Below the pieces are notes generated by a model that saw nothing but the letters and a program-made list of their open reading frames with translations, made no database searches and was not told where the DNA came from. Below are positions 32,529-49,511 of a stretch of 64,000 nt of DNA, one piece after another. The stretch covers positions 10,540,001 to 10,604,000 of the forward strand of contig NW_026974141.1 in NCBI RefSeq assembly GCF_037042905.1, given 5' to 3'. The stretch comes from Lytechinus pictus. Its lineage: Eukaryota. The position numbers and the translations under genes were made by a program. Every line of letters starts with the position of its first letter. Within the stretch, counting starts at the first letter, position 1.

Positions 32529-32654
32529 TTCTTTAACGGGCGAAATTAACATATACGTTAGGCCCGTAGGTTCGTCTACAGCATGGGCCAGTGTCTCTTT
32601 GATCCCTACATGACACATACTATTTGATTTCATATAGGCCTATATAAGCATAAC

Positions 32655-33188
32655 ATTAGCCTTTACACCAGACCTTTCCGTTGCTCAAAAGCATTTGGAG
32701 ACGTTTTGTGGGCTAGAAATAATAGTTTTCAACCATTTTCGGTCCGGATTTCGGGAAATTATGAAAATATGAATATTCCAAATGCAAAATTATGGAACGC
32801 TTCACAATCTTGTGTTCCATGAAGGATAATATTAGCCTACAAACCAGACCTTTTCAATGCCAAAAAATGCATTTGAAGTTGAAGACGTTTTGGGGGATAA
32901 AAATGTTAGTTTTTAACCTTTTTCGGTCCGGATTTCGGGTAATTATGAAAATATGAATATTCAAAATGCAAAATTATGGAACGCTTCAAGATCTTGCATA
33001 TCATAAATATTGATATTAGCGTTTCTATCAGACCCTTTCAATGCAAAAATAATTTGGAGACACTTTTCGGGCTAAAAATGTTAGTTTTTAACCTTTTTTG
33101 GCCCGGTTTTCGGGAAATTATGAAAATATAATTATTCAAAAATGCAAAAATATGGAACGCTTCACGATTTTGCGTGTCATCCTTGCGC
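32655..33188 (-). repeat. Three tandem ~180-bp units, each containing the U6 3' end plus its downstream flank
   Basis: Units start with ATTAGC at 32655, 32831 and 33015. AAAA(T/A)TATGGAACGCTTCA occurs at 32786, 32970 and 33146. Confidence 0.88.
33146..33188 (-). ncRNA. U6: U6 snRNA, 3' part (nt ~65-107)
   Basis: Reverse complement reads GCGCAAGGATGACACGCAAAATCGTGAAGCGTTCCATATTTTT. Confidence 0.95.
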
Positions 33189-33224
33189 CTGCTACATCTC
33201 AATCTTTTTCATTTTTATTGGAGC

Positions 33225-33444
33225 CTGCAGCCAATGACGTTGCCCCGTTTGCCAACAAAAGGAACAACATATGGGCCAGCCGACCAATCAAAGGCGTCCA
33301 TTCGGCATCTTTCCGTCCGAATCGTCTGCCATAGATCACGTCATAGATCACGTGTCACCACTACTTCAAATTGCTTTCTGACGAAGATCTCTCGAACTTC
33401 GAACGAAAGTTTTTGCCGACCTTCTTCTGCAATCAATTTGACAG
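33225..33444 (+). promoter_or_regulatory. Candidate transposase promoter and non-coding first exon
   Basis: CpG-richer patch with CCAAT boxes (~33231, ~33284), a duplicated CATAGATCACGT with an E-box, and a possible donor GACAG|GTAATT at ~33443. Confidence 0.35.
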
Positions 33445-33920
33445 GTAATTTTACCTTTTCTCATGCCAATATTAGTGTTGAATGCTGATATGATTGTTAC
33501 TGCAGAAATTCTGATAACTCTTGTTATGTTTTGATGTGCCATTAAGTGAAAAATTGGATGAAAAATATGACGAGTTTGTCGCGGTTTGTCAGTTGGAGTG
33601 CACTGACGAGTGATAGCTATTGTTTTTCACGTGTATTACAATGGTCGATTTTCACGCGTGTGTGGTGATGAATTGAACTGGTTTGAACTCTGATTGAATT
33701 ATTGATTAGTTAATACCTATACTAGTAACGGTCTGTGGAGCCTAATCCAAATCCGGTGATTAAGTATTGAGTGTTGTGATGTATTAATATCTACCCGAGA
33801 TCATTATTTGTGTCAAAGGCGTGTGTAGGGGATTGTCTTTATTTAGCTTGACTGTGTCTGTGACTTGTGAGAATTGACTTGAGTTTGATCTACTCTCAAC
33901 TTCAAGTATCATACCTCTGG

Positions 33921-34065
33921 CTACCTCAAGGCCAAGTGATGTTCGTGCAGGATCCACTCCACTTCTCTACCGCTACACTACGCTAGGTGGAGCGTAGACG
34001 TATGTAGCGGTAGTGAAGTGGAGTGGAGCCTGCACGAACATCGCTTGAGCCCGAAGTTGAGGTAG
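33921..34065. mobile_element. Hairpin MITE inside the Dada element
   Basis: Near-palindromic CTACCTCAA...TTGAGGTAG; CCTCTGG duplicated at 33914-33920 and 34066-34072. Confidence 0.7.
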
Positions 34066-35335
34066 CCTCTGGCTAACGTCAGTCTTGATGCCTGATGGTG
34101 GGGGAGGTGTTGACTTAACCACCGTGGAGCACTTAACAACATATTTAGGTGGTACGGGGATGGGCCGCTTTGAATGACCCCCCCTTTTCAGTTCTCTAGA
34201 CTAGATGCTTCATGACAGAATTCTATTTAGATGCCGCCCAGCCCCGGTCGCAAGACCCCCATTAGGCCTTACGAAACATGTCAATGCCCAGACCTAGCCC
34301 TGCCAAAATTGTCCAGTGAGAGCTGCATGCTCGCCTTCTCAACCCACTCCGCTTAGCACCGTAAGCGCCCATACATGCACAGCAAGTGTGCACCGTACCC
34401 CCTGTACCGCGATCCCGTTCCGTCACGCTGCCTGGAATAGAGTAGATAGATCTATATTTAGTTCCCAAGACCGTGTATTTTACTCTTGTCAGTTCCTCAG
34501 GGTGTTGTGAGGCATCCACACCCCCATCTAAACATAATTTTAGTGCCCACCCCCCCCCCCCCCTCCCCATTGGATTTAATTTACAAGATCAAAGTTTAAA
34601 AACTCATTCAATGAAGAAGGTTGTGATTTTCTGTTAACTAGGACTCCTTGTGTGGGAAATGAAGTGGGTAATGTTTGCTTGATTGTTTTTTGCATACTGC
34701 AGTTTGCAGTACAACTAGATATATCATCATTTAACTTTGCTCTGAAATAAATTGAATTATTTCAAAAAAAAATTGTAATGAATTAAAAATTGTAATTGTT
34801 GACTAATACCAGTTATGAAAGTGTTACATCACACTTATTGATATATTGTATGTCCATGTGCAATTAATTCCTTTAAAGAAGTGGAAATTTCATAAAAATT
34901 AGATGTAAATAAAGTTATGACATTTAATATTTTTGCTTAGTATCACAAAACAGTAAATATGCACAGCCTGATCGGTATGGAAATGAGGGGGAGTGATGAC
35001 TTCATGAATTTACTTTTTATTTTGCTTGTAAATACATGAAATATGAAATTTATCCATTTTAATTTTGAAATGAAGTTTTATTCCTCCTGAGCATGTGAAA
35101 TTAACATTGTTTTAATATTTGTTGGTTCAGCAAAGTTAGATGTGGCCTGTGATTCCTGCTAATAATTGTTTTTGTATGTTTTTCTCTTTCTTTACCTCTG
35201 CAGCAATCTCCATAGACATTTGGCGGCCATCTATTTGTTATCTGTTTCGTAGTCAGTCTTTGTTTTGTCTTTCTTGTGTCTCTGTGTGTGTTAGTACTTT
35301 TGTTCTTTTCAGGTCTTTGAAGGAGGGAGGAAGAC

Positions 35336-38300
35336 ATGTTCGAGCCAGCGTTCTTCTACAAAGGCAACATCCTGAGGTTGGGGGATTCAGATAGAGCCAG
35401 AGCCTTCACCAGACCAGAGGGATTCAAGGTACGCCCAGCTGTAGAAGTTGAGAAGGAGGCCAAGAGGGAGGTCCAACGCCTTGGTGGAGACCCAAGTCAT
35501 CGTGTGTCTGTGCTGGCCTTCTCCAGAGTGCAGTTTGGCAAGTACCCAGGACAGACCTTCAAGTGGCTGGTGGAGAATGCCCTGGGATGGTGTGCCGAGT
35601 TGATGTGGAACATGGAGCGGACTGGGGAGAAGTTGGACCCAAAGAGAGACCAGTCCGTCAACAAGTTTGCCCTTAAGGAGTACATCACAGCATTTCCTGA
35701 AGGGTGTGCCGCTGTTGAGATGAAGAGGAAGAAGGGGAAGCGTCAGACAGCAGGATGCAGCCAGAGTGAGAGTGGACGACCTCCAAAGACTGGATCCATG
35801 AAAGATCAAGGTAAGTCATTTTTTATTTAAATTTAATTAAATTTATATTAGAATTTTGAATAAACGGAAATGGGGTGCAAAGAATTTGTATGTTCGTTAG
35901 AGATGTGTAGGAATCCTTTTTATTGAAGTTTATTTTAAAGGTAAAATTATAGTAGATGCTGCAAACAGTTATTTCATGAGAGAGTCTTTGAAAATAACCT
36001 GTATATACTGGTCGGTCTGAAATAGCCCAGTTAAGATAGGGTTAATGTTAATTGCCACAATATTATCATAGATCTACATGTAATAAATTTAAAGTAACTT
36101 TGTGAAATCATGAAATCTTATCTCAAAACCAATAATTCTAACGATCAGTAGTGAGAAGAATGTATATGCGGCACAGTGTATTGATAATGTTTTTAAAATG
36201 CCCAACATATTTTATTTAACTCTGCTTATTTTGCTAATTTATCACCAATGACACATTTTTTTTCCATTAGCTATTAAATGTCATTTTAAGATTGCAACCA
36301 CAAGTGGTGTTTATAGCGTTAATAAATAGAATGATTGTTCATGAATAGAAATTGTTAATAAATATAATTTAATTGTTAATTGCAGTGATGCCACTTATTA
36401 TAGCAAGCTCTCTGACAATTAAGTCATTGGTGATAACTTTCATAAAACATTCCTTGGGATATTTATGACCAAATAGCATAAATATTGACAGTGAATGAAT
36501 ATTAAAATATTAGGTTGATATCAATATGAACTTTATACTTCCCCCAATAGGTGAGGGACAAGTTTTCGATGATGACCTCACTGATGCTCAGTTGATTGAA
36601 GCATTTCTACAACGTTCCTCCTTAGATTCTGCAGGTGCGTATTGTATTATAAGTTAACACATAATGTAAATTTTGTATTGGTCTTTCTTGAAATGGCTTT
36701 GCTAAAAAAAAAACCTACTTGTAATTGAAAAGAGGAGAGGAATGCGAGAGAGCAATAGAGGAGGTGTATAAAATGGAAGAAAGAGAGGAATTTGAGTAAT
36801 GTAAAAAACAAAAACAAAGTAAATATATTAAAGCATAAAAAAAAGGAATTCATTAAAAATTCCATCAAAGCTAAAATGTAGAACATACTCTTCATTCAGT
36901 GTTTTTATATTGTAATGTGTTAACAGGAAATGTGAATGCTCATATTATTTCACTGATCACTTTTTTGTATTTTTAAGAATTTGAATATCCCTCTCCTCTA
37001 ATAATCAATGTTTTGTTTTGTTTTTTCCTTTTAGAAGCCACTACATCAAGAAAAGTGACTTCAACATGCAAGAGAGCAGTAGCAGATGACGGAGATAAGA
37101 CAGGTAAATGTGGTTCATTTTTTCTTTTCTGGACATTTAACTTATGGGACAAGAAATATGTACTGCAACCAATCTAATAAAGTCCAACACTAGATATAAT
37201 TTTTTGTTAGTGTGCACTACACGTGTGGTTATTGAGAATACCTTGAAAGCATTGAAATAAATACATATGTTTCTTTATAGTAGAGACTGTCTTCCCTTGC
37301 ACCTGCCATTTAAGATTGAACTTTTTTGCACGATTAGTGTGAACAATGATTGGATGACACCTACATAGAGAAGAAGTAGCTTGATAATGTAATAACTGTA
37401 ACATTACTTGTACATTATTAGAAGACAAATATTGTTTTCCTTATTTTATTTGCCTTTATTCTCCTGATTTCATTTTTCAATGTACCAGCATGTTACATTA
37501 TTATGATGTGACTTGAATCTCTTTCAAAGATTAATATATCTGTATATTCGTCTAAATTATCTTTGTACTTTTTTTTCCAGAGTACCTCCTGACCGAAGGG
37601 TGGAAGCAGACACTACCACGTCAGGATCATCAGTGGGTTTCACGTGCTTTGTTCAAGGTGTCAGCCCGTGGGAAGCCTGAGTTTGACATGCAGAAGATCA
37701 ACACACTTTGGTTCTTCCCACCTTTACCACAGTTCGCTCAAGGCCAAGCTCCAAAGCCAGCACGTTACTTTGCGACCAAACTGCTGATGTGGATGCCTCG
37801 CAAGCTTTGGGGATTGAAGATTCTTTGTCCCAACAAAGAATGCAACGGTCAGGAGCTGTTATCAGCCGGTGTCTACTCCCATGTGCGACAGGTCATGGAC
37901 ATTGATGGATTCTACAACATGGGTGCTGAGTACCTGGAATGCAGAAAGTGTCACAAGAAGTTCATCAGTTGGAGCAAGCCCATCTTAGACCAACTGGACA
38001 CCAGTCACCGGCTGTCATTCCCGGTCTTGCTCACATACAGGTTAGTGAATATCTTGTCAATATCCAAAGAATATTCCTTTATTTCTTGTTTATGTATAGC
38101 TTTTGCATTGCTTTATTATTATAACACAATTCATATGTCATTGTATTTCTGTTAATTTATTTCTTAAACTTATTGTTTTCAAACTATTTAATTAATTAAC
38201 GTCATTGACTTATTATTATCATTATCTTGTATTTCCCAACTTTGCTTACCTAATTTGTAATATGAAAATACTTTACACTTTACATTTCCTTTCTTGTTTG

Positions 38301-41300
38301 TTAAATGATTAATTATGTTAATGTATGCTATTTGTCAAGCGCTTAGATACATCATGTTAAGCGCAATATAAATACAATTTTAATTATTAATACTTTACTT
38401 CATTGCACCCTATACTGCTATAATGCGATATTTCAAAACCATATGACAGACATATGACAGTGATATACTGATTCCTAAATTTCTTCTTTTTGCTACAGAG
38501 GTGCTTGTGACAGGAAAATCATCGGGATGATGCGGGACAGGACACTTGGCAACGGACCATTCCAGATGATCCGCAAGCTCAAAGAGGTCCACACCGATGC
38601 TTGGCTTGCAAAGACTGCCCAGTATTGTTCTGTGGTTGAGGAGTTCGTCAATGCCAGTGAAAGGGGCCTCATCAATCGACCAAACTGCCCACCACCGCCC
38701 GCAATGTCTTCTCTTCCCACGTATCGTTGGCTCCTGACGGTGTACTGCAACGACGTGCTGGAGCGCATCGATGAAGTGAAGGCTAGCATCACATCTACAT
38801 TCGGCCGTATCCTCAAGATGGACTCGACCAAGAAGGTGAACATGAATGTGCTATTCATTTGATGTAATATCATCTTGTGTAACAAAATGGTTAACTTAAA
38901 AAATTCAAGAAAATGGGTGATGAACGTTTGATTACAATCAACCACTTTTAAGCATCTAATTCTTTTATTGTTGCTTGTGTGGTTTAAGTGGTGACTGACA
39001 GCAAAAACATTACACTTTAAGGACTTTCAATTAAGACTTTGATTAATAATTGTAATCTCATTCCTGTTTGTTTATCAATGTTTCTTTACTTCCTTCATTT
39101 CTCTGTATAATATAAATGTGTATGATTGTATAAGATACTTGAAATTCATTCCATTTCTGAAATTTATCTTTTCATCACAGATCACAAGGAAACTGAGAGG
39201 CGAGTCAGCAGGGACTGCTGCTTGGGCATCCAACGTCGGCAACGAGTACGGACAAGTACTGATGTCCGTGATGACTGTTGGCGAGGGAGCCGGTCTCTAC
39301 GAGATGATCAAGGGCATCCAGAGACGGTATGCAGCAGCCGGCCAACCTAGACCAGAGCTTCTGTACGTGGACAGAGGCTGCTGTGGTGCGGAATCCAGGA
39401 TCTTCAGGGGGTGGCCAGACATGCCTGTCCGACTTGACGTCTGGCACTTCATGAGGAGGCTTGCTAGAGGATGCACCAGCACTGAGCACCAACTCTACCC
39501 GTTCTTTCTGAGACGGTTGTCAGCCTGCATCTTTGCATGGAGCGCAGACGACCTGAATCAACTCATCGCCGCAAAGAGAGGTGAACTCAGGGACCAATGC
39601 ATCGCTGAAACTTCTGATGAGGTCATCCTGAAGCACCTTGGAAAGAGCTCGATCGCACGACACTGCAGACGAGTGACCAGAGGAACGGAGGAGACTACCC
39701 AACTCATCGGAGATCTCTTGGCTTCCTTGGATGGCGAGGGAGGACATGACACACTCGGTGTTCCCCTCTTTGACTCCGACAGAGTGTGGGAGATTTGGGA
39801 CTCACAGCAGAAACACATCGCATGCCTACAAGATCCACCAGATGTCCAGCTCTACACCAAGATAGGAGAGTCAGTGAAAGGTGGCATCACATTGCCTGTG
39901 TACAGATGTGCTAGAGGGTCAACATCGCTGGAGTCCTTCCATCTTCACATGAACCGGTTCATCCCTGGTAAGTTCATGTCTTATATCACTTAAAGTGTTG
40001 TAAAACAAGTGTTATAAAATCTGTCAATGTAAGATCATGCTGATTCTTCACCATCATGTCACTATTTGGAGCATCTTTATTTCTACAGGTTTCTGTCTAC
40101 ATTCCTTTTGTGTATTGCAATGGATACATTTCATAATACATTCGAAATACTTTGTTCATTTCATTTTTCAGGGACATCAGCCAACAATGTCCACTTCCAG
40201 GCCTACCTTCTTGAGGGGGTACATCGATGGAACTGCGATCGTGCAAGGGATGCTGAAGCTGCCACTGCGCCTTCTCACGCATCATATGGCACCTACAATG
40301 AGTACGATGTCAACCGGTTGACCGAGAAGCTGTTCGGACTTAAGATCAACCCTACTCTGACTGCACCCCAGAAACACACAGGTATGCCAATGCCTTTTCT
40401 ATTGTAGTCCATTCATATATGACTCCTAATGGTCTATGAGTTATGTCAATATAAAATGCATTGAACTGATGAAATGAATTATTTTGTTATCTCAATTTTA
40501 ATTCCATTTATTCAAAATTTATCTAGATCTGTATTCCTTTCTTTCTGTCAATTTATTTGTTACAGGGGAGCTTATCGGCCTGGAATATCTCTTCAACCAG
40601 ACCAACGAGGAGCTACTTCCCATGCATCCTGATGAAGGGGAGGTAGAAGATGATGATGGCGAGGACGTAGGACGTCGGGAAGAAGAGGACGTAAAGGACC
40701 CGACTGAGCCACCCCCGGAGTTTGGAGTAAGCCCTGCTTCATCCCGACGTGCCTCGAGAGTGTCAAGCCAGCAATCAGTACCACAGCACGTTAGCAGTGA
40801 GTATTTCCTATATTTTCAACGACTTTTCTTTGATTGTATTTTCAGGGAGTCATTACTACGAGCTTTACTTCAACAATTTATTCCATGACAATTGGGAACT
40901 TACACTGCTGCTCAGATGTTGTTGCAGTCCAAACACATGCTGTATCTTTTACTTTTTTATTTCTTTGTAAGACATTGTACCATTTTTGGATCAATGTATT
41001 CTTCATTGCTAAATTAAATAACAATTCGATATACCTGCAAAAACACAATAATAAATCTTCCGAGTGACTTCCCAACATTAGAAAATATTTCTATTTCTTC
41101 TATCTCATTTTACCTACAGCAACACCACAGAAACACAGATCACAGAGATCATCACTGCCGGTTCCATCCACCAGATGCAGACCCCACACATCCAAGGCAC
41201 CGGCAACAGTATCACGTGCTCCAGATTCACCACCACCAACTTCAATTCACAGAACATCCACAGCACCAGCAACTGTCTCCCGGGCACCCGATTCTCCAAG

Positions 41301-43562
41301 GGATGACACACCGGATGGTGGACCACTTGCTGGAGATGAAGAAGTGAAGGATGTCGAAGATGTGGATCTTAGAGAAGAGTCCGACGTAAGAGAAATAATT
41401 TGTATTTTTATAATGCTTATTTCATTCATTTATTTATTATAATAAATGAATAAAATGAAATAAGTATGAATGATTCATTTTAAGTGTCCATGGGAAAAAA
41501 TAATACATGTTATTGATGGCTTCATTCAGAACAAGTTGGCCTGAATAATTAATTTATTTTAAGATGTTATCTTTTTTCTTGTCTTACATACAAAGCTTGC
41601 ATTTAAAAATATTATTTATTTCACTTTTTTTGATTTGATGTTCCTGTTATAATCACTAGTCATTTTATAAATGGATGGCTATAGAAAATGACATATAGAT
41701 TGTAGTCACACTGTTTATCAATGTGCAATTCTCTTTTGTTAATCCCATCATATGCATTGTCCTCTTTATTGTAATTTTACTTTTACAGGAGGAGCACACA
41801 GGTCGCAGACCAGGTTACGACCGTGTGCAAGCACTGGGGAACTACCTCCTCAAACTCAGAGGTGACGAACATCTGATGAGCTCCAGGGACTCCAAACAGA
41901 TCGTGAAACTTTGGAGCGAATTGGATCCATACGACCAACAAGTGAGACGCCCGGCCCGTCACCAAGAGAAGCTCACCAAAGGACGCTTCAAAGCCAGAGG
42001 AACATCTCCAGTTGTCCCAGGCATAGAGAGTACTCAAAGGTATGTACATTCAACTCTATTAATTTTTCTGGGTGATTTATCATGATGCAATCATGAGCAG
42101 CCTTCTTGTCTACTTTGCAAAGATATAGAATAAAAAAGAAGTATCTCAACTCGCCGATATTGATTTCATTCATCACATTCCAGTTCTTCGTTTATATCAA
42201 TCACCTTATTACTTTCACTTACAGCAATACAACCAGCAGTTGAAGTGTGCTGTACACGATTTCTTGATGTATTTTTCTATCATTGTATATTTTTTCCTCC
42301 CCTCGTACAGATGCTTTCTTGGAAGTAACTCAGGACCCGCCTCCGTACCCAACGCCAACAGGGTTATGGAGTATGTCATCGGTCAGCTCTGCAGCTACTA
42401 CCCAGAGCACCAGAGGCACAAAGGGAGAGTCATTCCCAGGTGGACCACTATCATCCATGACTACAAGAACATTCGAAGCAGGGTCCTGGCCTCCACCCAC
42501 ATAACATCCAACACCCGCCTACAATTGTTAGATATCAATCGATATGTCCTCATTCAATGGTAAGAATATTGTAAAATGAGTTAAATTTCGAGCACTTGGA
42601 AATTTCTTTTATTGAATTGAATTGATTTCTTTTACATACTTTGGAACATACAGATAATTAATATGGTATATCAATCATACCTGAATTAAATAATACAGCA
42701 ATTTGAAATCAAAGACAATTTAAAATATAATGAATTAGATGGAATCATTGAAAGCAATTCAATGGCATCACAATTTTATTTGTAACAATTTATCTGTGTT
42801 ATTACAAAGTATTTCAAATGTAGCAATAGATCGTATCTTTAGCAATATCTATCTCCCTATGAAATACAGCCTGTCTAATGGCATTTTTCTTTCTCTTCCT
42901 TTTCTTATTTCATGTACAGGCATAACCGAAGATCTAAAGAAGAGGAGAGGAGTGCATTGGAGATGGGAGCTTCGGCACCTAGACCTAGCATGACTGCCCA
43001 CCAATCTGTCCCACCACCAAAGGAGAAACCACATGCCTTGCCACCACCTCCCATCCAAAGGCCCTACCAGTTCCCGATGGTTTCCAACACAGTTGGTCAG
43101 GCAAAGATGAGAGCACCAATAGCACAACCAACATTTGTTCTGGTTCCTGTTCCTGTAATGGCCGTACCATCAACCCCTGTGTCCACCCCTGCCCCAACTA
43201 CAGTCTCTGTCCCTGGATTCCGGTCCATCCAGCCTACACCTCCAACCTGGCGGCCCAGTGTACCACAGCCGAGTCTACCACCACCTTCATCACTCCCGAA
43301 GTCCACCCATTACAACAGGAAGCGCAGAGCACAGCAACGACTCGAAGGACAGGTTTCTACCAAGGTTTACAAGGCCCGGAAAGGTCCGATTGTATGCAGC
43401 CAGTGTCATCAACCAAGGGATCGAGAGACTCACACTCAATATTATGGCAGCTGGTATTGCGAGACATCCCAGAACCAACCCTTGGCTGAATGGAAGGCGA
43501 TGATGTCAGAACGGCGACTAGCAAAGCTGAAAGCTGACAAGGAGGAAGCCAAGAAGGACTAG
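35336..43562 (+). CDS. Dada DDE transposase, 12 coding exons, ~1353 aa
   Basis: Exons with GT-AG boundaries and consistent phases: 35336-35810, 36551-36634, 37035-37103, 37581-38040, 38499-38835, 39181-39967, 40172-40381, 40566-40796, 41120-41385, 41789-42039, 42311-42559, 42920-43562 (4062 nt). Motifs: CPxxxC..ECRKC, KMDSTKK, YVDRGCC, RLDVWHF (DxxH), RGSTSLESFH and a C-terminal CxxC..H..C. Confidence 0.88.
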
Positions 43563-44665
43563 TGCAGTGAATAATATGTTTATCAAGACGGCAGAAGTCG
43601 GGTCGCCGGCGACTAAACTGGCGCCACCTACTGGAAGCTATGCCAGTAGGGAGGGGGATTAAGACCTCCTGCAGGATGAAAAACAAGACCTGTTAAAGTG
43701 GATCATTGCACCAGTCAGGCACAAGCAACATCGTATCTATGGATTTAGGACACACTAATGAGAAACCAGAGGAATGAGAAAAATGGAATGAAGATTGCTA
43801 ACCTTCAAGGAGAGAGGAAACAGTATAGGTAGAAAGAGGAGATTGTGGGCAGCTTCATATGAAAAAGGGTCAAACATTCATTGAGAAATAAGGACAGGTT
43901 TTAAAACAACAGTGAAAGACCATCTGGAAGATATAGAACATATTACAAAAATTGTTAGATGACAACAGCGGCAGCAGAATAGTGAGGAATCATTGCAGAA
44001 ATTTTCAAATTCAATACAACTACGAAAGCAGATGGGATATTTCAGCAGTTTTCGAGAAAAGCTACAATCTGATAGAAACTCATTTTCACCGCCACAAAGT
44101 ACCCCGAGGAGCTCTGGTTCTTGCAATCATTGAGCATCTCGAGTGGTGACTCAAGTTATATCGACATTCACGACGTCTCAGTGCTATAGTACGATATCCA
44201 TGATGGATAAGCATTGAGGACTTAGTGGAATGTGCAACAGAATTTAGTAACAATGAAACATGTTAAGAAAAATAAATGTTGGATGTTATACAACAAAGTA
44301 CTGTACCTTAGACAAGCAACTCCTAAGGTGACTATTTTTTCCGATCGTTCACGGGTATCCTTGTGAAGCTCCATATTTAATATGTTGAGCATCATTTGCG
44401 ATGACTTTGTGGAGCGGTCTCTTAAAACTAGTGTGATAATGTCAACTAGTTTGGTTTTTAATGCTGCCAAGACATTAACCAACTTTCTTCAAACTGCCAT
44501 TCAAATTTGTTGAAAATTGGTTGATGTTTTGAAGGTCCCAAGCCCTTGTCAAAAGCAGAGGGAAAACCAAGTAATGCTTCTTGAAAAATCCCAGGAGAGG
44601 AAAAGACGTAGGAAAAGAGAGAGATTAAAAATGATGGGGGAGGGATTTACAACCTTTCGGCACTC

Positions 44666-45100
44666 GCATCCTTCTTGTATAAATGTGACTTAATACCTTT
44701 TTCCACACTCATAAATGGGATTTACTACCTTTTAGCACTCGCACTCACAAATCTTAATGACTTCTTGAAAATAATTATTTTTAAAAATGTGACTTGCTTC
44801 CTTTTGGTATAAATGTGACTTAATACCTTTTTCCACACTCGTAAATGGGATTTACTATCTTTTAGCACTCACACTCAAAAATCTTAATGACTTCTTGAAA
44901 ATTATTATTTTTAAAAATGTGACTTGCTTCCTTTTGGTATAAATGTGACTTAATACCTTTTTCCACACTCGTAAATGGGATTTACTACCTTTTAGCACTC
45001 ACACTCAAAAATCTTAATGACTTCTTGAAAATTATTATTTTTAAAAATGTGACTTGCATCCTTCTTGTATAAATGTGACTTAATACCTTTTTCCACACTT
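44666..45100 (+). repeat. 130-bp tandem repeat, ~3.3 copies, in the Dada 3' region
   Basis: Units start at 44666, 44796, 44926 and 45056. Confidence 0.9.
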
Positions 45101-46104
45101 ACAACTACATATATATATATATATATTATATATCATTTTTTTTTTTTTATTCATGACTAAACTACAACAAATCTTTTGAAAGGTTTATTATTTATTCCCT
45201 GGGGAAGGAGAAATAGGAAAGAAACTTTTGCTTCAATTATAAATTAATAAAGAAGGCATTAATGAATAAAAAAATGAATGAGTAAATGAATTAATGAATG
45301 AGTCAAGGAATGAATGAAAGAAATAATAANNNNNNNNNNNNNNNNNNNNNNNNNNNNNNNNNNNNNNNNNNNNNNNNNNNNNNNNNNNNNNNNNNNNNNN
45401 NNNNNNNNNNNNNNNNNNNNNNNNNNNNNNNNNNNNNNNNNNNNNNNNNNNNNNNNNNNNNNNNNNNNNNNNNNNNNNNNNNNNNNNAAATGAAGGATCT
45501 TTCTCTCATTCTATTTCTTTTTCATTACTTTATCCCCCCTAACCCCCCCCCCCCCCTCTCTCTCTCTAATCAATAAATTTGAAAAGACAAGATATATCTT
45601 TCCTTCCATTCTTTCATTTTCTATTTATTTATTTATTTATTTATCTATCTAATATTCTTCTTATTTATCTATTTATTCATCTAATATCTATCTATACATA
45701 CATATCTTTGTTTATCTATATCTTTGTTTATCTATTAATTATTCTGTCTATCTACCCCCCCCCCCCCTCTCTCTCTTTCAGAAGTGAAAAATACAATGAA
45801 CACAAACATAAATGCAAAATACATTCATTTCATTTCAAACAAACTGCATTTATTAAAAAATCAACCGTCATTACATTACAATAAAAATCGTGCCTAAAAT
45901 GTCATTATTTACTTTCTTTTTCCCCCTCTCCGGCGTTCCATACGCCCGAACCCGACCGATTTGTTTTCAAACAAGGCTCCATTTCCCACGCCAGCGATGG
46001 CTCCGCCCCCCTTCTATGGCAGACGATCTGCCCAAAAATCCACAAAACAGCGCCGGCGTGGGGGCCTATGGGACGCGGGGACAGAGAAGATTAGTCGGTA
46101 GCTT

Positions 46105-46117
46105 TTGCGCAGGGGCC

Positions 46118-46149
<32 letters not shown>

Positions 46150-46174
46150 ATAGATGTGTTGCCGAAGCGAACAC
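46105..46174 (-). ncRNA. U6: U6 snRNA, 5' part (nt 1-70)
   Basis: Reverse complement reads GTGTTCGCTTCGGCAACACATCTATTAAAATTGGAACGATACAGAGAAGATTAGCATGGCCCCTGCGCAA. Joined to the 3' part with one TSD removed, it gives 107 nt. Confidence 0.96.
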
Positions 46175-46199
46175 GACTATGTCAGGAAACCTCTCTCAA

Positions 46200-46257
46200 T
46201 TTAAACTAGAGCACATGTATTTCAAACTCTACACAGTTAGCGCGCCAGCACCACGTG
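46200..46257 (-). promoter_or_regulatory. U6 type-3 Pol III promoter: TATA-like box, candidate PSE and E-box
   Basis: TTTAAA at -26 to -31, candidate PSE around -52 to -69, and CACGTG at -78 to -83. This matches the TATA-like + PSE + USF E-box layout known for sea urchin U6. Confidence 0.75.
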
Positions 46258-47189
46258 TACCCGTAGAATAGCGACGCTCCGGCGGGATATAATAGGTACT
46301 ATTGACCGACTGATCATAATAACAACTGGAAGGTATAATAGATTTGTCACGTGACCAGAGCTCCCACCAATAGGAGCCAAGCACAAGCCTTTATGCAAAT
46401 CGATTATATGGAACCGAGCCACCGACGCACACCGATGCTCGTAATGTGTGATCAAAGTCCACAGGAAGCTTTCCATTTGTAATAATATCAGAGAATAATA
46501 ACAAGCAAACGTCTATGGCGCTCTTGATCTCTTTGTTGACTGCAACGTTGACAAAGTACAAACGGGAATCGTTGTGATTGAAGTAGACCCATGAAGATAT
46601 TTGCTGATAGACGGTGCACCGTAGACATCTGTGATACCGAGGGTTATATGAATATTCCTTTACTCTCCGGTGGTCTAGTTCTCAGTAACCCTAGTCCTAG
46701 TCTGAAAGAGATTAGAAAAAAAAACATATCTATAACATAAAATGACAAGCCACATGTATGCATGGAAACGTATATTACTCATTGTGTATTGACATACATG
46801 TAAGTCTAATTTTGCAAAGGAACATTAAAGTTTAAGACAGAGTAACCATAACACACAGATGGGGGAAGAAAGTATACGGAATGAGATTGCGGAGGTTAAG
46901 TTTAATAGTGTATGAGAAAACGAAGTGAAGGTTAAGTACTAAGTAAAGCAGAGTAAAATACATAGTGAGCATAATAGAAAAAGGGATATGAATATACATA
47001 TACATATATATATATATATAAGAGAGATATAAGTACATAGGGATGTGAGCATATACAGGAAAGAGAAATTAATATAATTATATAGGAAAGGGGGCTATAG
47101 TAAACATCAGCCTATACCGATATGAGAGAAATGGGAAAAAGAAAATGGATCGAAAATAACAGAGAAAGTAGGGTGAACATAATTAAAAG

Positions 47190-49260: not shown

Positions 49261-49419
49261 AGGCCATGCTAAAGCCCCTTTCACAATTGCTAGTGCGACT
49301 TGCTACAACCGTTGCGATTCTGTGCAACATAATATTGTGACCAAACGATCGTACGAGCAATTGTGAAAGCCCCTTAATCTTCTCTGTATCGCGGCTCCAA
49401 TTTTAATATATGTGTTGTC
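49261..49419 (-). pseudogene. U6: Truncated U6 retro-fragment (nt ~12-62), split by a 102-bp MITE
   Basis: GGCCATGCTAA [MITE] TAATCTTCTCTGTATCG..CCAATTTTAATATATGTGTTG; flanked by GCATCCAGTC(GT/AC)AGG direct repeats at 49246-49260 and 49420-49434. Confidence 0.75.
49273..49374. mobile_element. Small Harbinger-like MITE with TAA TSD; related copy at ~49093-49205
   Basis: CTTTCACAATTG...CAATTGTGAAAG inverted ends; TAA at 49270-49272 and 49375-49377. Confidence 0.75.
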
Positions 49420-49511
49420 GCATCCAGTCACAGGACTGGTCTCTGTAGGTCACTAGCGCACGAGTCGTGGAAGTGTTTCACGACCTCCAGCCGACTAGGT
49501 GCGACTTCTTA

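What the first reader, a model, noticed from the sequence alone, without database searches (positions are those of the whole stretch)
33146..46174. U6 snRNA gene split by a complete Dada-U6-type site-specific DNA transposon
Seen: both halves of a 107-nt U6 flank a 12.9-kb insert, with GCGCAA duplicated exactly. The insert lacks TIRs and encodes a DDE transposase antisense to U6. Known: Dada transposons target small-RNA genes with 6-7 bp TSDs, and Dada-U6 was originally described from fish, water flea, oyster and polychaete. Inference: this is probably an echinoderm representative, which may be an undescribed family and a candidate for sequence-specific integration tools.
Basis: partly seen in the sequence, partly recalled or inferred. 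Interest (0 to 1): 0.9.

Follow-up and report, generated by a model that had tools for sequence, protein, structure and literature searches.

The report
U6-targeting Dada transposon in sea urchin
A 12.9-kb jumping gene of the rare Dada-U6 kind, which inserts only at one exact spot inside U6 spliceosomal RNA genes, sits intact, transcribed and apparently still functional in the painted sea urchin Lytechinus pictus, extending this family to echinoderms.

Summary
A canonical 107-nt U6 gene on the minus strand is split after nt 70 by a 12,916-bp insert (33189-46104) with an exact 6-bp duplication, GCGCAA. An uninterrupted U6 on another chromosome serves as the empty site.

The insert is an autonomous Dada-U6-type DNA transposon:
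- It has no TIRs.
- A CAGAGAAGATTAG sub-terminal motif mirrors the same motif in U6.
- An 11-exon gene antisense to U6 encodes an intact 1,325-aa protein with all Dada hallmarks (CCCC finger, DDE triad, DxxH, CCHC).
- The predicted core fold is closest to the ISCth4 (IS256-type) transposase.

The genome is Lytechinus pictus. Three copies about 98% identical all lie at the same U6 site, and at least one is an independent insertion. Their ORFs are intact, with exons 4-6 times less diverged than introns, and spliced transcripts exist.

Relatives in Diadema (urchin) and Patiria (sea star) are also U6-inserted. The searchable literature lists Dada-U6 from four phyla, not Echinodermata. Repbase and Dfam could not be checked.

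The assembly gap is non-coding and both its sides are collinear with the other copies.

Verdict: a new member of a known kind. A puzzle remains: only one unoccupied canonical U6 site exists in this assembly.

The parts
33146..33188 (-). U6 snRNA 3' part (nt 65-107), including the left copy of the TSD
   Evidence: Sequence. It is 100% identical to nt 65-107 of the intact C18 U6.
33183..33188 (.). Left target-site duplication, TTGCGC (GCGCAA in U6 sense)
   Evidence: The same 6-mer flanks copies c2 and c3.
33189..46104 (+). Dada-U6-type transposon: 12,916 bp including an estimated 158-N gap
   Evidence: The boundaries are defined by the empty site and by three copies ending at identical bases.
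33199..33211 (+). Left sub-terminal motif TCAATCTTTTTCA, 10 nt from the TSD. It is a degenerate counterpart of U6's CTAATCTTCTCTG; its 9-mer matches the published TCTTCTCTG at 5 of 9 positions, and AATCTT is exact.
   Evidence: The offset is the same as that of the motif in U6.
33933..34047 (.). Hairpin with 45-nt arms (93% complementary) in the 5' non-coding part of the element; role unknown
   Evidence: I1.
35336..35810 (+). Coding exon 1 (ATG at 35336), aa 1-159
   Evidence: Gene model. Matches P0001, P0019 and P0021. Homologous to the N-terminus of Dada-U6_DR.
37035..37103 (+). Coding exon 2 (23 aa)
   Evidence: A transcript-like contig joins it to exon 3 (loose end at 37578).
37581..38040 (+). 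Coding exon 3: DUF6729 and the CCCC zinc finger (C264, C269, C302, C305)
   Evidence: Pfam PF20499, E = 1e-47. Motif alignment.
38499..38835 (+). Coding exon 4: end of DUF6729 and the first catalytic D (D443, KMDSTKK)
39181..39967 (+). Coding exon 5: second D (D511), DxxH (D533-H536), the alpha-helical insertion and E698
   Evidence: Fold evidence.
40172..40381 (+). Coding exon 6
40566..40796 (+). Coding exon 7
   Evidence: The splice joint 40796>41120 is seen in RNA-seq reads and in a contig.
41120..41385 (+). Coding exon 8
   Evidence: Joints 40796>41120 and 41385>41789.
41789..42039 (+). Coding exon 9
   Evidence: Joints. Matches the Antedon, Ptychodera and amphioxus homologues.
42311..42559 (+). 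Coding exon 10
   Evidence: Joints. Homologue matches.
42920..43562 (+). Coding exon 11: CCHC zinc finger (C1271, C1274, H1283, C1292) and the stop codon
44662..45099 (.). 130-bp tandem repeats in the 3' non-coding part
   Evidence: D1.
45330..45487 (.). Assembly gap (N), non-coding, with both flanks collinear with sister copies
46082..46094 (+). Right sub-terminal motif CAGAGAAGATTAG, 10 nt from the TSD
   Evidence: The 9-mer CAGAGAAGA also stands near the right end in Diadema, Patiria and stickleback.
46105..46110 (.). Right target-site duplication, TTGCGC
46105..46174 (-). U6 snRNA 5' part (nt 1-70)
   Evidence: Rfam RF00026, 70.6 bits. It is 100% identical to the C18 U6.
46121..46133 (+). 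U6's own ACAGAGA-box region read on the plus strand (CTAATCTTCTCTG), 10 nt from the TSD. Together with 46082-46094 it forms a perfect 13-bp inverted repeat.
   Evidence: Fold z = -3.65.
46200..46257 (-). U6 promoter elements: a TATA-like box (46200-46205, about -28), TAACTGT (46233-46239, about -62) and the E-box CACGTG (46252-46257, about -80)
   Evidence: Sequence, shared with copy c3's U6.

Best explanation
This is an autonomous, probably still active Dada-U6-type cut-and-paste DNA transposon of Lytechinus pictus, inserted in a U6 snRNA gene.

Shown:
- It sits between U6 nt 70 and nt 65, with a 6-bp GCGCAA duplication.
- It lacks TIRs.
- It encodes, antisense to U6, an 11-exon, 1,325-aa transposase. 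The protein has an N-terminal CCCC zinc finger (DUF6729), an RNase-H-like DDE core with a DxxH motif and an alpha-helical insertion, and a C-terminal CCHC finger.
- Three copies about 98% identical occupy the same site in three U6 genes.
- The ORF is intact in all three copies and evolves under purifying selection.
- Spliced transcripts exist.

Inferred mechanism: the transposase recognises the DNA sequence of U6 around CTTGCGCAG. It probably uses the motif CAGAGAAGATTAG, which stands 10 nt from the cut site both in the target (the U6 ACAGAGA-box region) and, inverted, in the element's right end. In that sense the target resembles a transposon end. Staggered 6-bp cleavage and DDE-catalysed strand transfer then place the element at one exact position. 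Sitting in a multicopy Pol III gene limits the harm to the host.
For: Site and TSD. Empty site.

Copies. Copy c3 has flanks 17-24% diverged, against 1.35% for the element's introns, so it is an independent insertion.

Gene model: all ten introns are GT-AG and the ORF is 1,325 aa. All three copies have an intact ORF. Exons differ by 0.23-0.38% and introns by 1.1-1.4%. Summed over the three pairs, 24 differing codons are synonymous and 12 are non-synonymous.

RNA: GT..AG joints at 40796>41120 (raw RNA-seq reads plus a contig), 41385>41789, 42039>42311 and 42559>42920. The read orientation fits plus-strand RNA.

Motifs: D443, D511, D533xxH536 and E698. The D-to-D spacing of 68 equals that of Dada-U6_DR, and both zinc fingers are present (compared with PMC3706591). 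There is direct block homology to the named Dada-U6_DR protein in Dataset S1.

Pfam: DUF6729. The family has 1,779 representative clusters.

Fold: ISCth4 transposase, Z = 11.5 over 218 residues; Hermes and the integrase cores reach about 8.6. By my recollection ISCth4 is an IS256-family transposase.

Relatives in context: the stickleback, Diadema and Patiria homologues are U6-inserted at the same site, each with CAGAGAAGA near the right end. In the tree, the window protein falls in an echinoid clade with the U6-inserted Diadema protein (SH-aLRT 100).
Against: - No transposition event was observed directly. Activity is inferred from intact ORFs, selection and low-level transcripts (13 RNA-seq reads in one run, 2 in a second, none in a third).
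- The left sub-terminal motif matches the published 9-mer at only 5 of 9 positions.
- Copies c1 and c2 share flanks (2.4-5.1% diverged) and may be a segmental duplication rather than two insertions.
- Two old copies (c4, and the right end c5) have non-U6 flanks.
- Clustering with the named Dada-U6 families of Repbase could not be computed. Several close annotated homologues (Antedon, Hoplias, one metagenome contig) showed no U6 or tRNA nearby.
- The role of the mirrored motif in target recognition is a hypothesis, also raised in PMC3706591, and was not tested.
Confidence: 0.88

Rival explanations
1. The element is a dead passenger. One ancient insertion into a U6 gene was copied passively by segmental duplication of the U6 locus, and nothing transposes today.
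For: Copies c1 and c2 share at least 1.5 kb of left flank and 0.74 kb of right flank at 95-98%. Copy number is low: three full young copies. RNA support is thin.
Against: Copy c3 shares only the roughly 125 to 300-bp U6 unit with c1, at 76-83% outside the U6 itself, while the elements are about 98% identical. Passive copies would not keep exons 4-6 times more conserved than introns, with synonymous changes outnumbering non-synonymous ones and no indel in 3,978 coding bases in any copy. The c1-c2 flanks are also more diverged than the element's introns.
Confidence: 0.08
2. The gene is a domesticated host gene derived from Dada (like dDada of cyprinid fishes) that merely happens to lie in U6 DNA, not a mobile element.
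For: Purifying selection and an intact ORF. A related gene on C18 (P0001, LOC129281443) has no recognisable termini or U6 flanks. Domestication of Dada-U6 is documented in fish (PMC8869645).
Against: There are three copies with identical termini and precise TSDs in three U6 genes. The catalytic D, D, DxxH and E residues are all intact, whereas both D residues of the DDE motif are mutated in dDada. The conserved right sub-terminal motif is retained.
Confidence: 0.03
3. It belongs to another DDE superfamily (MULE, hAT, Kolobok or P) that landed in U6 by chance.
For: The fold also resembles Hermes (hAT) at Z = 8.6. The DxxH motif is shared with those superfamilies (PMC3706591).
Against: No Pfam MULE or hAT domain matches; only DUF6729 does. 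The identical insertion site recurs in three copies and in three other species. There is direct homology to the named Dada-U6_DR protein. The element has no TIRs and a 6-bp TSD.
Confidence: 0.01

Closest known systems
Dada-U6 families (Dada-U6_DR of zebrafish, Dada-U6_GA of stickleback, and others; Kojima & Jurka 2013, PMC3706591; Kojima 2022, PMC8869645)
   Same: - Same insertion site in U6 (nt 65-70) and the same GCGCAA 6-bp TSD.
- Transposase antisense to U6, and no TIRs.
- CAGAGAAGA sub-terminal motif at the right end.
- An 11-exon gene.
- CCCC finger, DDE with a D-to-D spacing of 68, DxxH and CCHC finger.
- Old copies with non-U6 flanks.
   Different: - The host phylum is Echinodermata; the literature lists Chordata, Arthropoda, Mollusca and Annelida.
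- At 12.9 kb it is longer than the published 4.7-11 kb range.
- The protein is 1,325 aa rather than 1,402 aa, and about 46-50% identical to the fish proteins over the core.
- The left sub-terminal 9-mer is degenerate (5 of 9).
- The CCHC spacing is shorter by one residue.
- One old copy (c4) is flanked by non-U6 DNA on both sides, which the 2013 paper did not see.
Other Dada lineages (Dada-U1, -tA, -tL, -tK, -tR, -5S)
   Same: The same transposase architecture and the same strategy of targeting multicopy small-RNA genes. Homologues found here in medaka and loach lie in tRNA-Arg/Lys and tRNA-Lys/Asn arrays.
   Different: A different target gene. In the tree the two tRNA-array proteins separate from the three U6-inserted proteins (SH-aLRT 99, five labelled rows only).
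IS256-type transposase ISCth4 (PDB 6XGX) and hAT Hermes
   Same: An RNase-H-like DDE core with an alpha-helical insertion domain. Z = 11.5 for ISCth4 and 8.6 for Hermes.
   Different: Only 8-12% sequence identity. Those elements have TIRs and no strict target-gene specificity. One is bacterial (IS256 type) and the other makes 8-bp TSDs (hAT); both statements are from my own knowledge. That ISCth4 belongs to IS256 is also my recollection.
Target-specific non-LTR retrotransposons of multicopy RNA genes (R1/R2 in 28S rDNA, Utopia/Keno in U2; PMC4640811)
   Same: The same ecological strategy: one exact site in a conserved multicopy RNA gene.
   Different: They move by RNA-mediated target-primed reverse transcription, not DDE cut-and-paste, and their proteins are unrelated.

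Membership tests
Dada superfamily | DDE catalytic triad with a DxxH motif after the second D | tested here: met
   D443, D511, D533-x-x-H536 and E698 are conserved in an 11-sequence alignment. The D-to-D spacing is 68, as in Dada-U6_DR (D567, D635).
Dada superfamily | N-terminal CCCC zinc finger | tested here: met
   C264-x4-C269-x32-C302-x2-C305. Dada-U6_DR has C389, C394, C429 and C432. The finger lies in Pfam DUF6729.
Dada superfamily | C-terminal CCHC zinc finger | tested here: met
   C1271, C1274, H1283 and C1292. The second spacer is one residue shorter than in Dada-U6_DR.
Dada superfamily | Sequence homology to named Dada transposases | tested here: met
   Homologous blocks were read directly in Dataset S1 for Dada-U6_DR (N-terminal block, the LPEGW..KQTLP block, both fingers). 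The protein is 38-54% identical to full-length amphioxus, fish and other homologues. No tree with the named Repbase set was made.
Dada superfamily | 6-7 bp TSD and no terminal inverted repeats | tested here: met
   An exact 6-bp TSD. No inverted repeat between the ends.
Dada superfamily | Distant kinship of the catalytic core to IS256/MuDR/hAT-type transposases and integrases | tested here: met
   AlphaFold model with pLDDT 84. ISCth4 at Z = 11.5; Hermes and ASV integrase at 8.6. The model was made on the 84%-identical paralogue P0001, not on the window protein itself.
Dada-U6 lineage | Insertion between U6 nt 1-70 and nt 65-end, with a GCGCAA or GCGAAA TSD | tested here: met
   for three of the three young copies.
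Dada-U6 lineage | Transposase encoded opposite to U6 (all described families except Capitella) | tested here: met
   U6 is on the minus strand and the CDS on the plus strand.
Dada-U6 lineage | [quoted passage not shown] | tested here: met
   46082-46094 is 10 nt from the TSD, mirrored by U6 at 46121-46133. The 9-mer is also present in Diadema, Patiria and stickleback.
Dada-U6 lineage | Matching sub-terminal TCTTCTCTG at the other end | tested here: inconclusive
   The left end has TCTTTTTCA (5 of 9) at the right offset, and AATCTT is exact. The Patiria, Diadema and stickleback copies examined are similarly degenerate.
Dada-U6 lineage | Copies flanked by U6; exceptions non-U6 on one side only | tested here: inconclusive
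   Copies c1-c3 are flanked by U6 on both sides. The old copy c4 (about 87-93% identical) has non-U6 DNA on both sides but keeps TTGCGC on the left. For c5, only the right end exists and its flank is non-U6.
Dada-U6 lineage | Phylogenetic clustering with the named Dada-U6 transposases | not testable with these tools
   The Repbase sequences are not referenceable here. The proxy tree with context-labelled homologues is compatible with one U6 group, but only five rows are labelled.

The most novel reading that the evidence does not exclude
Dada-U6 may have occupied essentially every canonical, promoter-bearing U6 gene of L. pictus: three of the four canonical U6 sequences in the assembly. The one unoccupied copy has an unrelated upstream region. 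U6 supply would then depend on that lone copy or on variant U6 genes whose target site is altered (CCCCTTGCACAAAG) and which keep TAACTG and TATA promoter elements. That would be a host-transposon arms race played out at an essential spliceosomal RNA.
Probability: 0.12. Interest if true: 0.8.

Novelty: new member of a known kind. Interest (0 to 1): 0.5.

Why it matters
Dada elements are described in the literature as the only DNA-transposon superfamily with strict gene-specific targeting. Nothing is known experimentally about how they find their site.

This copy is complete, appears to be under selection, and is transcribed. Its host, as far as I know, is being developed as a genetic model sea urchin. 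That makes it a practical starting point for a transposition assay and for testing the idea that the target mimics a transposon end.

It also extends Dada-U6 to a fifth phylum, with U6-inserted relatives in a second urchin order and in a sea star. The nearby tree branching roughly follows host phylogeny, which suggests long vertical persistence at one 6-bp site.

If the U6 census is real rather than an assembly artefact, it raises the question of how a genome tolerates loss of most canonical U6 genes.

Tried and rejected
1. Genomic context of close annotated homologues:
- Antedon (two loci), Hoplias and one metagenome contig showed no U6 or tRNA within 10 kb, so they do not help to label the lineage.
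- P0002 and P0019 were not on record.

2. The C18 array of five units of about 1.1 kb, roughly 80% identical to element positions 33280-33581:
- It has no Rfam family and no convincing ORF.
- My first guess, an snRNA (U2) repeat, was wrong. It remains unexplained.

3. Domestication of the C18 paralogue P0001:
- The L. variegatus counterpart (P0185) is collinear over the gene body.
- Its flanks do not align with C18, so orthology or synteny was not shown.

4. A compensating U4 variant for the variant U6: all U4 genes examined are canonical.

6. Reading the roughly 180-bp repeats beside the U6 3' half as Dada-made duplications was rejected. They align with U6 over about 85 nt and look like decayed U6 units.

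7. No complex prediction was run, and no claim of protein-protein binding is made.

Full report
**Observation**

Rfam places the first 68 model positions of U6 at 46174..46105 on the minus strand (70.6 bits). The rest of U6 (nt 65-107) reads on the minus strand at 33188..33146.

TTGCGC on the plus strand (GCGCAA in U6 sense) occurs at 33183-33188 and at 46105-46110. The neighbouring bases differ, so the duplication is exactly 6 bp.

An uninterrupted 107-nt U6 at C18:14849201-14849307 of the same genome matches both halves at 100%. The halves overlap on it by precisely those 6 bp. This is the empty site, so the 12,916 bp between the halves (33189-46104) are an insertion.

**Assembly gap**

The 158 N at 45330-45487 lie 1.77 kb downstream of the stop codon, in AT-rich DNA next to 130-bp tandem repeats. 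Both sides align collinearly, in the same order and orientation, with two gap-free sister copies. The element is therefore continuous across the gap and no reading frame is involved. I did not read the corresponding letters in the other copies.

**Host**

The best database relative, P0001 ('uncharacterized protein LOC129281443 [Lytechinus pictus]'), lies on a contig of 26,260,804 bp. That is exactly the length of C18 of this genome, and P0001 maps to C18 at essentially 100%. The genome is therefore L. pictus.

**Copies in the genome**

- c1 is the window copy.
- c2 is at C21:5360621-5373664 (minus strand) and c3 at C7:27792269-27805014 (plus strand). Both are about 98% identical to c1. Both lie at the same position of a U6 gene with the same TTGCGC.
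- c4, at C7:27836056-27850687, is about 87-93% identical, rearranged and carries stop codons. Its flanks are non-U6, although TTGCGC survives at its left junction.
- c5 is a right end only, 78% identical, with a non-U6 flank.

c1 and c3 share only the U6 unit. Their flanks differ by 17-24% in substitutions, against 1.35% for the element's introns. c3 is therefore an independent insertion into a paralogous U6 gene.

c1 and c2 share flanks that differ by 2.4-5.1%. They may be a segmental duplication or two insertions into recently duplicated genes.

**Gene**

Guided by homologues and by RNA joints, I obtained 11 coding exons on the plus strand. All ten introns are GT-AG and the ORF is an uninterrupted 1,325 aa. 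The published Dada-U6_DR also has 11 exons, and 1,402 aa.

Transcript evidence:
- A raw-read RNA-seq run of the same species gives 13 reads. Their orientation fits plus-strand RNA.
- Two of those reads cross the joint 40796>41120.
- Contigs of another run, whose library type is not on record, carry four GT..AG joints and the exon 2-3 junction.

Expression is low but real, and five of the ten introns are supported.

All three copies keep the full ORF with no indel. Exons differ by 0.23-0.38% and introns by 1.1-1.4%. Summed over the three pairs, synonymous codon differences outnumber non-synonymous ones 24 to 12. That is purifying selection on the transposase.

**Protein**

Pfam sees only DUF6729. 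An exhaustive search finds 1,779 representative clusters, all named 'uncharacterized' or 'DUF6729'.

An alignment shows every Dada hallmark of Kojima & Jurka:

| Feature | Residues |
|---|---|
| CCCC finger | C264, C269, C302, C305 |
| First catalytic D | D443 |
| Second catalytic D | D511 (spacing 68, as in Dada-U6_DR) |
| DxxH | D533-H536 |
| Catalytic E | E698 |
| CCHC finger | C1271, C1274, H1283, C1292 |

The paper's Dataset S1 shows that the named Dada-U6_DR protein shares the N-terminal block, the LPEGW..KQTLP block and both fingers.

An AlphaFold model of the core was made on the 84%-identical paralogue P0001 (pLDDT 84). It has an RNase-H-like fold with an alpha-helical insertion. The best match is the ISCth4 transposase (Z = 11.5 over 218 residues), ahead of the integrase cores and Hermes at about 8.6. 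By my recollection ISCth4 is an IS256-family element. This agrees with the distant kinships reported for Dada.

**Termini**

There are no TIRs.

At the right end, CAGAGAAGATTAG (46082-46094) lies 10 nt from the TSD. U6's own copy of the motif lies 10 nt on the other side, inverted. Together they form a perfect 13-bp palindrome around the junction.

The left end carries a degenerate version, TCAATCTTTTTCA, at the same offset.

CAGAGAAGA is present near the right end in every U6-inserted relative I could examine:

| Species | Distance from CAGAGAAGA to the TSD |
|---|---|
| L. pictus | 14 nt |
| Stickleback | 14 nt, counted to a degenerate TSD-equivalent hexamer |
| Patiria | 13 or 14 nt, depending on how the junction is parsed |
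| Diadema | 20 nt |

**Relatives in context**

- The stickleback protein P0255 lies in a U6 tandem array. A lone U6 3' half abuts its left end.
- The Diadema antillarum protein P0186 has U6 halves on both sides of an element of about 18 kb.
- The Patiria miniata protein P0217 has U6 halves on both sides of an element of about 12.9 kb.
- Medaka P0195 sits in a tRNA-Arg/Lys array, and loach P0157 beside tRNA-Lys/Asn.

In a 42-protein tree, the window protein falls in an echinoid clade with the Diadema protein (SH-aLRT 100). That clade is sister to the crinoid Antedon (99). The nearby branching roughly follows host phylogeny, with hemichordate, sea-star, priapulid and shrimp proteins close by. 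The two tRNA-array proteins separate from the three U6-inserted ones. Only five rows are labelled, so this is weak evidence.

**Mechanism**

Shown: the exact site, a 6-bp staggered duplication, an intact DDE enzyme, and repeated independent use of the site.

Inferred: sequence-specific target capture, probably by zinc-finger or DUF6729 contacts with the motif shared by the element end and U6, followed by DDE strand transfer. The 2013 authors proposed the same idea, and it is untested.

**Novelty**

The searchable literature mentions Dada-U6 in three papers and lists four phyla, without echinoderms. Sea-urchin genome papers report only generic 'Dada' RepeatMasker hits. Repbase and Dfam could not be queried.

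I rate this a new member of a known kind. It is valuable because it is complete, constrained and expressed in a laboratory urchin.

**Open puzzle**

- A pattern spanning the target finds just one perfect unoccupied site in the 812-Mb assembly.
- That U6, on C18, lacks the E-box, TAACTGT and TATA layout shared by the three occupied genes.
- Variant U6 genes with an altered target region carry TAACTG and TATA elements.
- All U4 genes examined are canonical.

Either the assembly misses U6 genes, or the element has nearly saturated its target.

Noticed in passing
G000:C18:14849201-14849307; window 46175-46260; G000:C2:21564484, C2:21576121, C6:16101906, C16:14319947: U6 census. There is only one intact canonical U6 in the assembly, and it lacks the E-box, TAACTGT and TATA promoter shared by the three Dada-occupied U6 genes. 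Three variant U6 genes (5' stem GTCGACAAGAAATTGTTGAC; target region CCCCTTGCACAAAG) have TAACTG and TATA elements, and poly-A retrocopies of the variant exist. All U4 genes examined are canonical.
   Followed up: partly
G000:C18:14833073-14837926 (L035): Five tandem units of about 1.1 kb, roughly 80% identical to the element's 5' non-coding region (window 33280-33581). They lie 11 kb from the intact U6 and about 21 kb upstream of the paralogous Dada gene. No Rfam family and no convincing ORF were found.
   Followed up: partly
G000:C18:14796815-14811690 (minus strand; L039-L041): A second Dada gene (P0001, LOC129281443, 1,124 aa), 78-89% identical in nucleotides to the window element. Its catalytic residues are intact, but it lacks the two conserved exons 41789-42559, recognisable termini and U6 flanks. 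L. variegatus has a 93%-identical counterpart (P0185) whose flanks do not align. It could be a domesticated gene or a second family; this is undecided.
   Followed up: partly
G000:C18:14103429-14104235; G000:C12:13747767-13748441: Two further, more distant Dada-like DDE cores (61% and 54% amino-acid identity) with open frames. L. pictus therefore holds at least four Dada lineages.
   Followed up: no
window 32646-33190: Three tandem units of about 180 bp beside the U6 3' half. Each holds a decayed U6-like stretch (about 85 nt alignable to U6), so the U6 gene sits at the end of a short array of U6 pseudo-units.
   Followed up: partly
window 49375-49420 (minus strand): A U6 5'-part fragment (nt 11-53, 87% identical) lies 3.2 kb beyond the split U6 gene.
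   Followed up: no
G000:C4:2989226-2989266: A lone U6 3' fragment that starts at about nt 67, right at the Dada target site, with unrelated upstream DNA. It may be the scar of an old Dada junction or of a one-ended event.
   Followed up: no
window 46095-46115: The element's last 5 nt plus the TSD and U6 read AGCTT-TTGCGC-AGGGG on the plus strand. This resembles a U4 snRNA 5' end (metazoan AGCTTTGCGCAGTGG by my recollection; L. pictus U4 reads ATCTTTGCGCAGAGG). That is expected for the TSD and U6 part, since by my recollection U4 pairs with this region of U6, but not for the element's own AGCTT. It may be coincidence.
   Followed up: no
L047 (medaka) and L043 (loach): The closest fish homologues by score sit in tRNA-Arg/Lys and tRNA-Lys/Asn tandem arrays. 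They are examples of tRNA-targeting Dada lineages annotated only as 'uncharacterized protein'.
   Followed up: partly
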